A stretch of DNA of 63,454 nt, counting the filler, from Hyphochytrium catenoides (lineage: Eukaryota > Protista > Hyphochytriomycota): assembly GCA_900088475.1 (NCBI GenBank). It is 8 parts of 8 records of this genome, joined end to end, with 100 filler letters (N's around TTAATTAATTAA, not from the genome) between each part and the next. Parts side by side here need not be neighbours in the genome. Positions count along the whole stretch, not along the records: positions 11,796 to 26,104 come from FLMG01000944.1; 7 more parts are not named here. The stretch is one strand, 5' to 3'. How positions within the stretch are numbered: position 1 is the stretch's first letter; each line of letters starts with the position of its first letter. Both the position numbers and the translations under genes were made by a program. The notes beneath the pieces were generated by a model. It was not told the DNA's origin. It did no database searches and worked only from the letters and a program-made list of their open reading frames with translations. This document shows, in pieces, positions 14,062 through 20,903 of the stretch.

Positions 14062-14343
14062 TTATGAGGAGTAAAAGACTGATAAGAGTGACTGGACGTA
14101 GTCAATAAATGAATCTTCTAAGCTTGACTCTTTCTCTCTCTCTCTCAACTTTCTCTCTCCGGGAAGTTTCACCACTGCAGTGAGTCCTTTGGTCCGCAAG
14201 TCCAGCCGGAGCTCCATCAGCAACCACTGACTATACTTGGCCTTGACAGGCCGTGTAGAGAGAGAGGGGGGGAGAGAGAGANNNNNNNNNNNNNNNNNNN
14301 NNNNNNNNNNNNNNNNNNNNNNNNNNNNNNNNNNNNNNNNNNN

Positions 14344-14377
<34 letters not shown>

Positions 14378-14536
14378 AGGAAGGAGGAAGAAGTGCGTCA
14401 GAGGTTTACGGGGCGACCTGAAAGACAACTCATATTGAGGCCTCCTCCCAAGGCAATGAAAAGAGAGAGGGGAGAGAAAGTAAATGATTGAGTGAAAGAG
14501 AGTCGTGGATGTGCATCAGCGCAGAACGAAACAAGC

Positions 14537-14578
<42 letters not shown>

Positions 14579-15067
14579 TATATGAGAGAGTGGGAGAGAA
14601 CACCAAATAAGGGAAATGAGGAGGAGTAATCAGTCAAAGCTAAATGACAAATGCGTCGGAGTAGGGCAGAAAGAAGAAGACAGAGTACTACGGCGAGAGG
14701 GAGGGCAGAGAGAGAGAGAAAGAAAAGGACCGAGAGAGAGAGAGAGTGAGAGAGAAAGAGAGAAAGAGAGAATGAGAGAGAGAGAGAGAGAAAGAAAGAA
14801 AGGAAGAAAGAAATAGAGAGAGAGAGAGAGAGAGAGAGAAAGAAAGAAAGGAAGAAAGAAAGAGAGAGAGTTGTGCGGAGAGAGGAGAGAATGGAAAGGA
14901 AACTACCTCCAGGGCATAACAGAAATACTTTATCCGCTGTTCCAAGAGGCCGCTTGCGAGGATCATGATCTCTCCTTCCTTCAACTGGAGCTCAAAGTCC
15001 GCCTCACTTTTCAGCAGAGGGAGAGAGAGAGACAAGGTTCGGCTAGATAGAGCAGGACCGGAAGGGA

Positions 15068-15101
<34 letters not shown>

Positions 15102-16556: not shown

Positions 16557-16588
<32 letters not shown>

Positions 16589-18566
16589 GATAGCGCACGT
16601 GAGAAGGAGAGAGTAGAGTATGGGTGACAAGACAGCCCCTAAGCACCCCAAAAGCTGAAAAGGGAGGGAGAGCGAGAGAGCGAGAGAGAGAGGGTAATGA
16701 AACAGTGAGGAAAACAGGGAGAAGGGTGACCTGAGATGAGAGAATGAATCAGACCTTTTCGAGCTTCTATCACTGGCACCAGACACCCGCCACTCTCCTC
16801 CTCTTTGAAGAAGAGAAAAGGGTTGAGCCCGCTCCTTCGGTGTCTCTCCCCCTGAACTACTTGCTGTCTCTATTTGTCTACTCTTCCTCTCTCTCTCTCT
16901 CTCTGTCCCTCCTCTTCCACGTCCTTCAGAAGACCATCCTCTCCTCATCGTTCTCTCTCCTCCTCTGCCGCCTCTCCCTCTCCCGCCCATCAGCTCTCCG
17001 TCACTCTGGGGAGAGAAAGAGTGCGTGGGAGGAGGAGGAGGATAGGCAGGAGGTGCACAGCGGCCTGGAAATAACATGCTGTACACCTGACCAGGAGAGA
17101 GAGAAAGAGAGAAAGGGAGAGAGAGAGCAGAAGGGTGAAGCGAGAGAGAAAGAGAGAGGGAGAAGAGAAAGAGAGAAATGTAGAGAGAGAGAACATTACG
17201 GAGTCAGAGTTGTGTGAGTATAGACTTTATCTAGAGAGGAGAGAGAATGTATCAGCAAGAGAACAGAAAGGTCCAGACGGAGGCCAGAGAAGCAAAAAGA
17301 GAGAGGCGTTCGCGAACTGGAAGCCAGGAAAGGAGAAGAGAGAGAGAGAGAGAGAGAGAGAAGAAACATAAGCGGAGACAAGATACCGGGGACAAGGGAA
17401 AGGACCAAGTCAAGGACAGTTATCAAGCAGATAGAGAGAGGAAAACGAGAGAGAAAGATTGACAGCGACAGAGGAGAGAGAATGAAGGGATAAAATTGGG
17501 GAGACGGGGGAGACAGAAGACAGAAAGAAATACAAATAGGGAAGAGAGAGAAAGGAGACGAGAGAGAGATTAATCCGAAGATACCCTATGTGCTTCAGCA
17601 TGGTAGACAGGGCTAGCGCGTGGTCCGCAAAGAAATTTCAGATCTTCCTCACAGGCCCGCAGCTGCTCCAGGCACAGTCCCTGATCGATCAGCCCGCCAA
17701 CGGCCAGCAAGGCCATGCGCATCACCTACCAAGAGAGAAAGGGAAGGGGGCGAGAGAGAGAGAGANNNNNNNNNNNNNNNNNNNNNNNNNNNNNNNNNNN
17801 NNNNNNNNNNNNNNNNNNNAAGAGAGAAGGAGGGGAGGGGAGAGGAAGGGGAGAGAGAGAGAGAGAGGGCGGGGTGTGGTGTGGGAAGGGAAAAAAGAAA
17901 GAGAGAGAGAAAGAGAGAGACAAGGAAGGGACTTAGCACTTGGGGTTTGGAGCATCAAAAATTCACCACCTCTCTTTTTTTCACAGTACTATTCTCGTCC
18001 GCACTTTCCCTCATTCTCTTTCTCTTCCTCACTCTCTCTCTTTCTCTCTAAGCTCAATACACATATAATACAACGACCTCTTTCTCCGAGAGACTCGATG
18101 CCTTCTTCTATCTTTATACTCTTCTGCCCTCTCCTCTCTTCTCTACCTGTCTATTGCGACCCTCATCCTGGCAGGTATAATCTCTCTCTCTCTCTCTCTT
18201 TTTTGTGTCTCTCTCTCTACCTTTCTCTTGCTCTCTTATAATGGTCTTCTCTTTCCTTGACAACTTTCGCCCTACCCAGCTTGCTTTATGCCGTTTCTCT
18301 CTCTTCTCTCCCACCACATTTCCCTCTTCTTCCTCACCTCCGCGCCTCCTCTGAAGGCCATTGTCCCACCTGAAATGAGCGCTAAAAGTCGCTCTGTGAG
18401 CACCTGGAAGGGGAGAAAACATGTCGGGGAAGAGAGAGCGCGTGTATATGTGAGTATGAGAGAGAGAGAGAGAGAGAAGAGAAAGCTAGATAGCGAGAGA
18501 AAGAGAGAGAAAAGAAAGCAAAATAGCAAGAGGAAATGGCCCGAAAGTTCCACGAGAACTCACAGG

Positions 18567-18604
<38 letters not shown>

Positions 18605-20068
18605 AAGAGAAGAAGAACAAAGAAGGAGAGAAAGAGCAAAATAGCAAGAGCGGATGGTATGAATGAGAACCCAGTGAGAGAGAGAAGAAGAGAAGGAGAG
18701 AGAGCAAAAGAGAGGGAGAAAGAGAAGGGAGAAAGAAAGAGAAAGAGGAGAACTAGAGAAAGGAGGAGACATTGAGATCTGTTGTGACCTGAAGGTCGTG
18801 AGAAGAGAGTCTCCGCACACTCGAGAGCCAAATATTCAATCCTCTCTCATGAGAGAGATTCCGTGTCTCTTTCACTTCATAAAACAGCTGATCGACCAAA
18901 GGATCCACCTTCTCTGGCTTCTTCAGCTTCTTGGTGAGGAGAGAGATCTTCCCTGTGATTGTCTTCATATTCTTCTCCATTGTCCCTCTCCCTTTCCCTG
19001 TTTCTCTCTCTCTCTCTCTCCCATGGCTCCCAAAGCCTGGCATTCTATGGAGTTGCCCTATATGTGTGCTGTATATGTAAGGCTGGGAGGAGGAAGACGG
19101 CTGTGCAGGATATTTGGCTGAGGAAGAAGAGCGGCCGGAAGGGTCCAAACCGTAGAGAGAGAAAGCGTCCGGACACAGTGCAAAACTGAAAATGTCTCCC
19201 TCTTTTTATAAACAACAGGAGGAGAAAGGGGTGGAGCATCGTAGAGGACAAGAAAGAGTGAGAGAGGGAGAGAGAAAGAAAGAGGAAGAGAAAAGGAGAA
19301 GGCAAAGGGGGAGAGAGGAAAAGAGAGAGAGAAAGAGAGAGAAGAGGAAAGAGAGAAGGGAAGACGAGCAGAGCACAAGATTAATTCTAGTACCAGAGCG
19401 CCACCGTTCGGAGGAGAGAAGAGGAAAGGAAGAGAAGGGTAAGCCTCCCGCCGCTCCTTCTTTCTACTCACACTTCATTTTGCTCTCTCCCTTTCTCTCT
19501 CGCTCTCTCTTTGTCTCACTCGCTTTCTCTCACTCGCTTTTCTCCACTCTTTCCCTTTCTGTCTCTCTCTCTCTCTCACTTACCCTGCAGCAGATGGTAC
19601 TCCCAGGGTGCTATTCGTGATCCTCTAACTATTGTACCGTGGCTGGAGCCANNNNNNNNNNNNNNNNNNNNNNNNNNNNNNNNNNNNNNNNNNNNNNNNN
19701 NNNNNNNNNNNNNNNNNNNNNNNNNNNNNNNNNNNNNNNNNNNNNNNNNNNNNNNNNNNNNNNNNNNNNNNNTGTGAGTTTAGCCTTAGAAGCCAACAGC
19801 AATCGGAGGTGCAAGGATCTTTCGAGTACATTCCAACAAGAGAGAGAGAGATGACCTTGCGACAAAGAAGAAAAGGGAGAGAGAGAGAGAGACCAAGAGA
19901 AGAGAAATAAATTGGAGGAACCACCACAGGACTGAAAGGGAGATAATAGCGGACGAGAAATTGGTATAAAGCCCATGAAGAGAGACACTCGAGAGAGGAG
20001 AGAGAGAGAGAGAGAAAAAAAGAACGATAGATACAAGGAAAGAGATAGAATGAGAGAGGAATGGGAGG

Positions 20069-20099
<31 letters not shown>

Positions 20100-20903
20100 C
20101 AAAGACAAAGGAAAAGAAAGAAAAAGAGAGAATGAGAGAGAGAAAAAGAAATAAAACGAGAGAGGGAGAGAGTGAGTCTACATAGACAGCTCCTCCTGGT
20201 CCATGCACGAGGCAGGCGTGGACTCTGGAGATAGAAGAGTGAGGAAGAGCATAATCGCAGAGAGCCGGCTCTCTTCCCAGCCGATAGAACTTGCTGGTTC
20301 CGATGGGGAGAGAGTCCACGTGTCTGCCTTCTCTCTCTACCCTTAGAACGGCGTTCCGCTGGGTGAGAGAGGGCTGCACTGCCCTAGGAAGCGGGGGAAG
20401 AGAAGAGAGAGAGAGAGCCTGAGTGAGATAGAGACGAGAGAGAGAGAGAGAAAAGAAAAGAGAGAGAGACAGAGAGAGAGTAAAGAGAAAGAGAGAGAGA
20501 GAGAGAGAGCGGGAGAGGAGTGAGAGAGAAGGAGGGAGCGAGAGAGAGGTGTGGCGGGAATGGATATGAAAGAAGAAGTAGAGAGAAAAGCGCAGAGGAG
20601 CGAACAAAGGAAACTAGAAAAAGACTTGAGAAAGGAAGGCAGAGACGCTGAGACCGATCCGTGCACGAGAAGAGGAAGTGAGGGAGAGAGAGAGGGAGAG
20701 AGAGAGAGAAACAGAGACAACAGGAGGGAGAGAGAGAGTGAGAGAGAACAAGAAAGAGAGAGAGAGAGGGATGGAGGAGGGAGGGAGGAATGAGAGATGG
20801 AGACAGAAAGAGAGGGAAAGAGAGAGAGAGAGGAAGAGAATGAGGGTTACCAGTCTGGCGGCACGAAGAGCGTATTTTCTGGGGCGCCAACTGCTCGTCT
20901 CAT
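14062..20903 (-). CDS. FHA + tepsin-like VHS-type domain + beta-adaptin appendage C-terminal (AP-4 beta-like) protein. Exons: 20851-20903, 20182-20383, 19584-(>19651, start in N gap), 18789-19201, 18338-18403, 17585-17725, 16755-17086, 16475-16524, 15966-16124, 15484-15559, 14907-15042, 14062-14241
   Basis: Spliced product: MRRAVGAPENTLFVPPDWAVQP..FYRLGREPALCDYALPHSSISRVHACLVH..GSSHGT..LQEGDIFSFA (FHA); MPGFGS; DPLVDQLFYEVKETRNL..LQVLTERLLALI..VMRMALLAVGGLIDQGL..AEAHRVYSML (helical); DLL in the linker; LQLSPSPHLAPADFERLW..IMILASG..IKYFCYALE..WLLMELRLD..AVVK..SFIDYVQSLLSVFYSS* (appendage platform). Every junction whose two ends are visible is GT-AG and in phase. Confidence 0.8.

What the first reader, a model, noticed from the sequence alone, without database searches (positions are those of the whole stretch)
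14062..20903. Hidden 12-exon gene fusing FHA, a tepsin-like VHS-type domain and an AP-4-beta-like ear: candidate phospho-dependent monomeric trafficking adaptor
Seen: exons buried in CT tracts splice in phase into one reading frame. The FHA C-terminal strand (..YHLLQ E GDIFSFALCPDAFSLY) lies in the same exon (18789-19201) as MPGFGS and the start of the helical domain, so the fusion does not depend on the N gap. Known: tepsin (AP-4 accessory) is ENTH, then a GFG motif, then tVHS, then short motifs binding AP-4 ears. AP-4 beta ends in a single platform domain (L.....FE..W ... ASG ... F..E). FHA domains bind pThr, and the GR, S..H and GT residues are present here (SSHGT, as in NIPP1-like STHGT). 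Inference: ENTH has been replaced by FHA and the protein carries its own beta-ear behind a disordered DLL-containing linker. This is a GGA-like layout coupling phosphothreonine recognition to vesicle coats. I do not recall this architecture being described.
Basis: partly seen in the sequence, partly recalled or inferred. Interest (0 to 1): 0.85.

Follow-up and report, generated by a model that had tools for sequence, protein, structure and literature searches.

The report
Multi-exon FHA gene, adaptor-like tail
A real-looking 12-exon gene hidden between CT-repeat introns encodes a protein of about 628 residues; its phosphothreonine-reading FHA domain is certain, but the suggested vesicle-coat domains behind it could not be tested here.

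Summary
The sequence observation holds. On the minus strand, 12 compositionally normal exons (20903 to 14062) lie between introns that are 72% C+T. From exon 3 to the stop codon, visible GT/AG sites give one 539-codon frame. Only the exon-3 acceptor is hidden, in gap 19652-19772. The FHA profile continues across that gap with about 4-5 residues missing.

The N-terminal FHA domain is confirmed. Pfam scores exon 2 above the curated cut-off, and the nearest solved structure is NIPP1. Its last strands share exon 4 with PGFGS and three weakly predicted helices.

The tepsin-like VHS domain and the AP-4-beta-like ear are neither confirmed nor refuted. Exons could not be joined by reference, so those domains were only searched exon by exon, and every search was blank.

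I add one point in favour. Exon 9 starts with SAFSFI, which fits the tepsin motif for the AP-4 epsilon ear as I recall it. A near-match to the beta4-ear motif follows 26 residues later.

There is no RVxF motif, so this is not a NIPP1 orthologue. No RNA evidence or homologues were found.

The genome resembles Physarum polycephalum. The architecture may be new but is unproven.

The parts
20851..20903 (-). Exon 1: ATG and 17 codons, ending in TG (phase 2). It encodes the N-terminus up to PPD(W).
   Evidence: The donor is GTAACC. TG plus the G of exon 2 makes the Trp of the PPDW motif typical of NIPP1/kanadaptin-type FHA N-termini.
20182..20383 (-). Exon 2: first half of the FHA domain, with the LGRE and SISRVH residues.
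   Evidence: Pfam PF00498 at E 1.8e-5, 25.5 bits against a cut-off of 20.7, profile positions 1-33. PDB NIPP1 FHA 2jpe at E 9.5e-8.
19584..19651 (-). Exon 3, visible part: GSSHGT... to ...YHLLQ, then G (phase 1). Its acceptor and about 4-5 codons lie in gap 19652-19772.
   Evidence: Pfam FHA profile positions 39-59, E 0.07. The donor is GTAAGT.
18789..19201 (-). Exon 4: the last FHA strands (EGDIFSF...FSLY), a Ser-rich linker, PGFGS (19040-19026), an RERERE run, then three helix-prone segments.
   Evidence: Translation. AlphaFold on this exon alone gives residues 1-67 without structure and helices at 68-91, 100-111 and 117-134, at a low pLDDT of 53. There were no homologues among 1.84 billion representative proteins.
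18338..18403 (-). Exon 5: 22 codons, phase 0/0, part of the helical domain.
   Evidence: Acceptor TTCCAG, donor GTGAGG.
17585..17725 (-). Exon 6: 47 codons, phase 0/0, part of the helical domain (VMRMALLAVGGLIDQG...).
   Evidence: No Pfam or PDB match on its own. Gap 17766-17819 lies in the intron upstream of it.
16755..17086 (-). Exon 7: end of the helical domain, then a Pro-rich, RGG/GRG-rich and RE-rich low-complexity region.
   Evidence: Most of the model's RGG/GRG matches lie in this exon.
16475..16524 (-). Exon 8: 50 nt ending at a visible donor, CAG|GTGCTC, just before gap 16417-16465 (phase 1).
   Evidence: With this donor, G plus the AG of exon 9 makes Glu, and exon 3 to the stop is a single 539-codon frame.
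15966..16124 (-). Exon 9: acidic linker with SAFSFI (16122-16105) and LVDLLSGVTLL (16035-16003).
   Evidence: SAFSFI fits S[AV]F[SA]F-hydrophobic and occurs once in all six frames of the 14.3-kb piece. It arises in 4.9e-4 of composition-preserving shuffles. LLSGVTL differs at two positions from LFxG[M/L]x[L/V], a motif confirmed in PMC13335578. The alternative acceptor at 16090 is out of phase with the visible exon-8 donor.
15484..15559 (-). Exon 10: ...APADFERLWVGTAA, the helix-prone start of the C-terminal domain.
   Evidence: Donor GTAAGT.
14907..15042 (-). Exon 11: amphipathic beta segment DFELQLKE, buried strand IMILASG, then KYFCYALE. An alternative in-frame acceptor at 15006 would drop 12 CT-derived codons.
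   Evidence: No Pfam or PDB match on its own.
14062..14241 (-). Exon 12: WLLMELRLDLR (strong beta amphipathicity), LTAVVKL, an RE-rich insert, the C-terminal helix FIDYVQSLL, then TAA.
   Evidence: Nothing was found in Pfam, the PDB, the ESM Atlas, metagenomes or the protein collection. AlphaFold on this exon alone has pLDDT 60 and is uninformative.

Best explanation
This is one protein-coding gene of 12 exons on the minus strand, in a genome with Physarum-type pyrimidine-repeat introns. It encodes about 628 residues.

Shown:
- An N-terminal NIPP1-type FHA domain with its phosphothreonine-contacting residues intact.
- The FHA is joined, within a single exon, to a Ser-rich linker and a helix-prone region.
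- A continuous frame runs on to a C-terminal region whose amphipathicity pattern reads helix, five strands, helix.

Inferred:
- The roughly 140-residue helical region is an ENTH/VHS-type domain.
- The acidic linker docks on AP-4 ears through SAFSFI and LVDLLSGVTLL.
- The C-terminal domain is a beta-adaptin-like platform.

On that reading the protein is a monomeric accessory adaptor. Its FHA domain would read a phosphothreonine mark on a cargo or regulator and couple it to AP-4-type coats. The linker motifs might also fold back onto the protein's own ear.
For: - Gene model: in-phase GT/AG splicing and a sharp contrast between exon and intron composition.
- FHA: Pfam above the curated cut-off; NIPP1 FHA is the top PDB match; the profile continues across gap 19652-19772.
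- No in-frame ATG lies in exons 9 and 10, and the only later ones fall at the last residue of exon 9 and inside the C-terminal domain. The C-terminal domain therefore needs upstream exons.
- SAFSFI is unique in six frames of the piece and rare in shuffles. A near beta4-ear motif lies 26 residues after it in the same exon.
- The only acceptor in phase with the visible exon-8 donor keeps SAFSFI in the protein.
- The C-terminal hydrophobic-moment profile reads alpha, beta x5, alpha.
- Exon 4 is predicted to hold three helices after a disordered linker (low confidence).
- The neighbouring DUF1295 gene has the same strand and the same intron style, so the scaffold looks coherent.
Against:
- No homologue of any exon was found.
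- Pfam found no ENTH, VHS or B2-adapt-app_C match in any single exon, even at E up to 10. PDB sequence searches returned only noise.
- The strict beta4-ear motif is absent.
- The RGG repeats and the NIPP1-like FHA point towards nuclear RNA biology.
- The link from the N-terminal to the C-terminal parts crosses scaffold gaps in a very repeat-rich assembly.
Confidence: 0.35

Rival explanations
1. This is a nuclear, RNA-processing-type FHA protein. A NIPP1/kanadaptin-like FHA reads phosphorylated splicing or transcription factors. The helical region is a CID-like or unrelated helical domain, the RGG box binds RNA, and the trafficking-like motifs and ear-like C-terminus are chance resemblances.
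For: - NIPP1 FHA is the best solved relative and kanadaptin also appears in the list.
- Six RGG/GRG repeats and a KKLK basic patch are present.
- No exon has a Pfam trafficking domain.
Against: - There is no RVxF PP1-docking motif, so it is not a NIPP1 orthologue.
- SAFSFI is expected by chance in only 4.9e-4 of shuffles.
- The C-terminal alpha/beta domain is left unexplained.
Confidence: 0.3
2. The model merges two transcription units, or two loci joined wrongly by scaffolding. One would be an FHA-plus-helical gene (exons 1-7 or 1-8). The other would be the hinge-plus-ear 3' part of a separate, beta-adaptin-like gene (exons 9-12).
For: - The piece is five contigs joined by N gaps.
- The Physarum-like assembly is described as full of unresolved repeats, with gaps that hide small exons (PMC4758236).
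- Exon 8 contains in-frame ATGs.
- If the exon-7 donor is ignored, the frame runs on about 88 codons to a stop.
Against: - All five contigs carry exons on the same strand.
- FHA halves lie on either side of the first gap.
- No in-frame ATG lies before the C-terminal domain in exons 9 and 10.
- The exon 7 to exon 8 interval is only 230 nt of ordinary CT-rich intron.
- Visible splice sites give one 539-codon frame.
Confidence: 0.2
3. The locus is not a functional gene as modelled. It could be a decaying or unexpressed locus, or one with several exon boundaries wrongly placed.
For: - No RNA evidence and no homologues, not even a self-hit in the protein collections.
- Donor sites are weak beyond GT.
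- GA-repeat runs have invaded exons 4, 7 and 12.
Against: - A 539-codon frame without stops across ten exons, in a locus whose introns are full of stops.
- An intact FHA with all its key residues.
- Balanced base composition in the exons.
Confidence: 0.1

Closest known systems
NIPP1 (PPP1R8) FHA domain, PDB 2jpe; kanadaptin FHA 4h87 more distantly
   Same: The FHA is N-terminal and is preceded by a PxW motif. The GR, SxxH and S-H-G-T residues are present. 2jpe is the best PDB match, at E 9.5e-8 with half the domain.
   Different: There is no RVxF PP1-docking motif anywhere in the model. Everything downstream of the FHA is unrelated as far as it could be tested.
Tepsin (AP-4 accessory protein: ENTH, VHS-like domain, tail with two ear-binding motifs)
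   Same: A helical domain of about 140 residues follows a GFG-containing linker. A disordered tail carries SAFSFI (the epsilon-ear motif type, as I recall it) and LLSGVTL (near the beta4-ear motif LFxG[M/L]x[L/V] given in PMC13335578).
   Different: An FHA stands where tepsins, including that of Dictyostelium, have ENTH (PMC3317806). The strict beta4 motif is not met. The order of the two motifs is reversed. There is an extra folded C-terminal domain. The VHS-like identity is untested.
Beta-adaptin appendage platform (Pfam B2-adapt-app_C; AP-4 beta4 ear 2MJ7) and the GGA layout (VHS, hinge, ear)
   Same: The order is a helical domain, then a disordered hinge with a DLL motif, then a C-terminal alpha/beta domain of about 125 residues. 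That domain has an F-x3-W helix, alternating amphipathic strands and a terminal helix. By eye it follows the order of the beta2 platform as I remember it, which is a lead and not a test.
   Different: Single exons have no Pfam or PDB sequence match. The helix between the first two strands of the beta2 platform seems to be missing. There is no GAT domain and no adaptin trunk.

Membership tests
FHA domain (Pfam PF00498) | Profile match above the curated cut-off | tested here: met
   Exon 2 alone scores 25.5 bits against a cut-off of 20.7, E 1.8e-5, profile positions 1-33. Exon 3 covers profile positions 39-59 at E 0.07.
FHA domain (Pfam PF00498) | Phosphothreonine-contacting residues (Gly-Arg, Ser-x-x-His, Asn/His-Gly-Thr loop) | tested here: met
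   LGRE, SISRVH and SSHGT are read directly from the sequence and align to NIPP1.
NIPP1 (PPP1R8) orthologue | RVxF PP1-docking motif after the FHA | tested here: not met
   A regular-expression scan of the whole model found none. Residues hidden in a gap cannot be excluded.
Tepsin | N-terminal ENTH domain | tested here: not met
   The N-terminus is an FHA domain. No exon has an ENTH match. All tepsins surveyed in PMC3317806 have ENTH.
Tepsin | Central VHS/ENTH-like domain | not testable with these tools
   The domain is split over exons 4-7 and exons cannot be joined by reference. The pieces give no Pfam or PDB hit. AlphaFold on exon 4 shows three low-confidence helices.
Tepsin | Beta4-ear motif LFxG[M/L]x[L/V] | tested here: not met
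   There is no strict match. LLSGVTL differs at two positions. The motif wording is taken from PMC13335578.
Tepsin | Epsilon-ear motif S[AV]F[SA]F-hydrophobic | tested here: met
   SAFSFI lies at 16122-16105. It is unique in six frames of the piece and arises in 4.9e-4 of shuffles.
Beta-adaptin appendage platform (B2-adapt-app_C) | Profile or fold match | tested here: inconclusive
   Exons 10, 11 and 12 were scanned separately and gave no hit at E up to 10. PDB phmmer gave only noise. The joined domain could not be submitted. The amphipathicity pattern is compatible.
GGA | VHS plus GAT plus hinge plus gamma-ear | tested here: inconclusive
   No exon has a Pfam match to VHS, GAT or Alpha_adaptinC2, but the split domains could not be tested as wholes. 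Only the overall layout resembles GGA.

The most novel reading that the evidence does not exclude
An amoebozoan-type monomeric coat adaptor, convergent on the GGA layout. An FHA domain reads a phosphothreonine mark. It is followed by a tepsin-type VHS-like domain, a hinge with AP-4-ear-binding motifs, and the protein's own beta-adaptin-type platform ear. The motifs could bind that ear within the same molecule and so autoinhibit the protein.
Probability: 0.2. Interest if true: 0.75.

Novelty: new variant of a known kind. Interest (0 to 1): 0.45.

Why it matters
Tepsin's function is still poorly understood, and no link between phosphothreonine reading and AP-4 coats is known. My full-text searches found no paper that mentions both an FHA domain and tepsin, and none that describes an FHA domain joined to an adaptin appendage.

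If the joined domains prove to be VHS-like and beta-ear-like, this would be a natural fusion pointing to phospho-regulated recruitment to AP-4-type coats. It would also be an independent, GGA-like monomeric adaptor outside opisthokonts.

If they do not, this is simply one more lineage-specific FHA protein. It would still illustrate how genes lie hidden in a genome of repeat-filled introns.

Tried and rejected
Those places were sent to no search tool afterwards; later scans used 11796-18687 and 18752-26104.
- The exhaustive HMMER search with exon 4 gave 0 hits, not even a self-hit.
- The search for homologous proteins gave nothing in three tries: the 275-aa stop-free frame restricted to the FHA, the neighbour's exon and the exon-12 frame. 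Its length window of 0.55-1.75 times the query excludes full-length relatives.
- Metagenome scans with exon 2 and exon 12 found nothing.
- ESM Atlas searches with exons 4 and 12 gave low recognition and no family.
- PDB phmmer with exons 3, 4, 6, 11 and 12 gave only noise.
- A joined reference for two exons is not accepted. I did not type the spliced protein, so Pfam, HHpred-type, AlphaFold and Foldseek runs on the whole domains were left out.
- AlphaFold on exons 4 and 12 alone gave pLDDT 53 and 60. This is too low for a fold search, so none was run.
- No local profile databases exist in the script sandbox.
- Rfam and tRNA scans found nothing.
- NIPP1 orthology was rejected because there is no RVxF motif.
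- The alternative exon-9 acceptor at 16090 was rejected as out of phase with the visible exon-8 donor.
- The papers that define the epsilon-ear motif (PMC4692204, PMC4805503, PMC5567745) are not held.

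
Full report
**What is in the sequence**

Reading the minus strand from 21200 to 13800 shows short stretches of ordinary composition separated by long CT-rich tracts and CT/GA microsatellites. 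I rebuilt the gene from the sequence. It has 12 exons, from an ATG at 20903 to a TAA ending at 14062.

Exons have A .25, C .24, G .29, T .22. Introns are 72% C+T on the sense strand. Every visible intron starts with GT and ends with AG behind a pyrimidine tract.

**The assembly gaps**

The direct test failed. I sent those places to no search tool afterwards. The indirect tests are these:

- **Gap 19652-19772** hides the acceptor of exon 3 and a few codons. Pfam's FHA profile is matched at positions 1-33 by exon 2, before the gap, and at 39-59 by exon 3, after it. The two flanks therefore belong to one domain, with about 4-5 residues missing.
- **Gaps 17766-17819 and 14282-14343** lie inside introns whose donor and acceptor are both visible. 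The frame does not depend on their length, although a small hidden exon cannot be excluded. The Physarum genome paper reports exactly that problem (PMC4758236).
- **Gap 16417-16465**: exon 8 seems at first to run into it. However, a donor, CAG|GTGCTC, sits at 16475/16474, just before the N run. With it, exon 8 ends in phase 1 and joins exon 9 as G+AG (Glu).

With that donor, exon 3 through exon 12 is 1620 nt, 539 codons, and the only stop is at the end. The model is about 628 residues: 85, plus about 4 in the gap, plus 539.

**The FHA domain is real**

- Exon 2 alone passes Pfam's curated threshold (25.5 against 20.7 bits, E 1.8e-5).
- Its best solved relative is the NIPP1 FHA domain (2jpe, E 9.5e-8). 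Kanadaptin appears further down the list.
- The GR, SxxH and SSHGT residues are present.
- The exon 1/2 junction makes the Trp of PPDW, and the exon 3/4 junction makes the Glu of LLQ-E-GD. Both are normal FHA positions, which supports these introns.

AlphaFold on exon 4 alone gives no structure for residues 1-67 and three helices after that, but at pLDDT 53. That is a hint only.

The protein is not a NIPP1 orthologue. No RVxF motif exists in the model.

**What could not be tested**

The middle helical domain is split over exons 4-7 and the C-terminal domain over exons 10-12. Those domains could therefore only be searched exon by exon.

Exon by exon, nothing was found:

- Pfam at E up to 10.
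- PDB sequence search.
- ESM Atlas.
- An exhaustive HMMER search of 1.84 billion representatives with exon 4.
- The word-indexed protein search.
- Metagenome scans.

These blanks weigh little against a divergent domain cut into pieces of 22-65 residues. They do show that neither domain is a close, canonical family member. AlphaFold on exon 12 alone (pLDDT 60, all helices) is not usable.

**Indirect evidence on the trafficking reading**

- Exon 9 begins with SAFSFI. As I recall from Mattera et al. 2015 (not held in the library), the tepsin motif that binds the AP-4 epsilon ear is S[AV]F[SA]F followed by a hydrophobic residue.
- That pattern occurs once in all six frames of the 14.3-kb piece. 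It arises in 4.9e-4 of composition-preserving shuffles of the protein.
- Twenty-six residues later, in the same exon, LVDLLSGVTLL contains LLSGVTL. This is two substitutions away from the beta4-ear motif LFxG[M/L]x[L/V] (wording confirmed in PMC13335578). I chose that loose pattern after seeing the sequence, and it arises in about 3% of shuffles.
- The alternative exon-9 acceptor, which would remove SAFSFI, is out of phase with the visible exon-8 donor.
- A hydrophobic-moment scan of the last 125 residues gives a helix at FERLW. It then gives amphipathic or buried strands at DFELQLKE, IMILASG, RIKYFCY, WLLMELRLDLR and LTAVVKL, and a final helix at FIDYVQSLL.
- This alpha-beta5-alpha order is compatible with an appendage platform. 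By eye it follows the beta2 platform as I remember it, minus one helix. That comparison is a lead from memory, not a test.

**Evidence pointing elsewhere**

- The region between the helical domain and exon 9 is rich in RGG/GRG repeats and RE runs. This is typical of nuclear RNA-binding proteins, and NIPP1- and kanadaptin-type FHA domains are nuclear.
[quoted passage not shown] This protein has FHA there instead.

**One gene or several**

For one gene:

- All five contigs of the scaffold carry exons on the same strand.
- The FHA domain spans the first gap.
- No in-frame ATG lies ahead of the C-terminal domain in exons 9 and 10.
- The exon 7 to exon 8 interval is 230 nt of ordinary intron.
- Visible splice sites give one long frame.

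Against:

- There is no transcript evidence.
- Exon 8 has in-frame ATGs.
- The assembly type is error-prone.

**Context**

The upstream neighbour on the same strand (about 22492-24995) is a DUF1295-family membrane protein gene with the same intron style. No tRNA or Rfam family is present.

The genome's features match the published description of the Physarum polycephalum assembly (PMC4758236):

- introns filled with pyrimidine-rich repeats;
- very many gaps;
- small DNA runs from 2011, which may be the 454 reads that paper describes;
- no deposited proteins, hence no self-hit.

The organism name was not shown to me, so this is an inference.

**Verdict**

The proposed FHA plus tepsin-VHS plus beta-ear architecture remains a reasonable hypothesis. 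It gains some support from the SAFSFI and LLSGVTL pair, but it is untested.

No paper in the searchable library holds both 'FHA domain' and 'tepsin'. None describes an FHA domain joined to an adaptin appendage. Joining the exons and running profile and fold searches would settle the matter in minutes.

Noticed in passing
window 22492-24995, minus strand: The upstream neighbour is a multi-exon DUF1295-family membrane protein gene (3-oxo-5-alpha-steroid dehydrogenase-like). Its last exon scores Pfam PF06966 at E 4.8e-10, and an N-terminal exon scores weakly at E 0.024. It has the same CT-rich intron style.
   Followed up: partly
window 19583-19460, 18337-17960, 15483-15250 and 20930-21200 (minus-strand sense): Several introns (3, 5 and 10) and the region upstream of the ATG begin with purine-rich AG/GA blocks, then switch to CT-rich sequence. 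The strand asymmetry is therefore not uniform within introns. The meaning is unknown.
   Followed up: no
window exon 4 (~19025-19000), exon 7 (~16900-16880), exon 12 (~14160-14140): GA-dinucleotide runs lie inside coding exons and are read as RERERE-type stretches. The genome's microsatellites appear to have expanded into coding sequence without breaking the frame.
   Followed up: no
window 18688-18751: This CT-rich stretch of intron 4 tripped the read laying filter. The stretch was kept out of all later searches.
   Followed up: no
window 12800-13216 (minus) and 21560-21790 (plus): These are two non-repetitive open frames of 138 and 76 residues, beside the gene, with no Pfam match. They may be exons of further genes or may be chance.
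   Followed up: partly
whole piece 11796-26104: Composition, repeat-filled introns, gap density and the lack of any self-hit in protein collections fit the published Physarum polycephalum assembly (PMC4758236). The organism was not revealed by the tools.
   Followed up: partly
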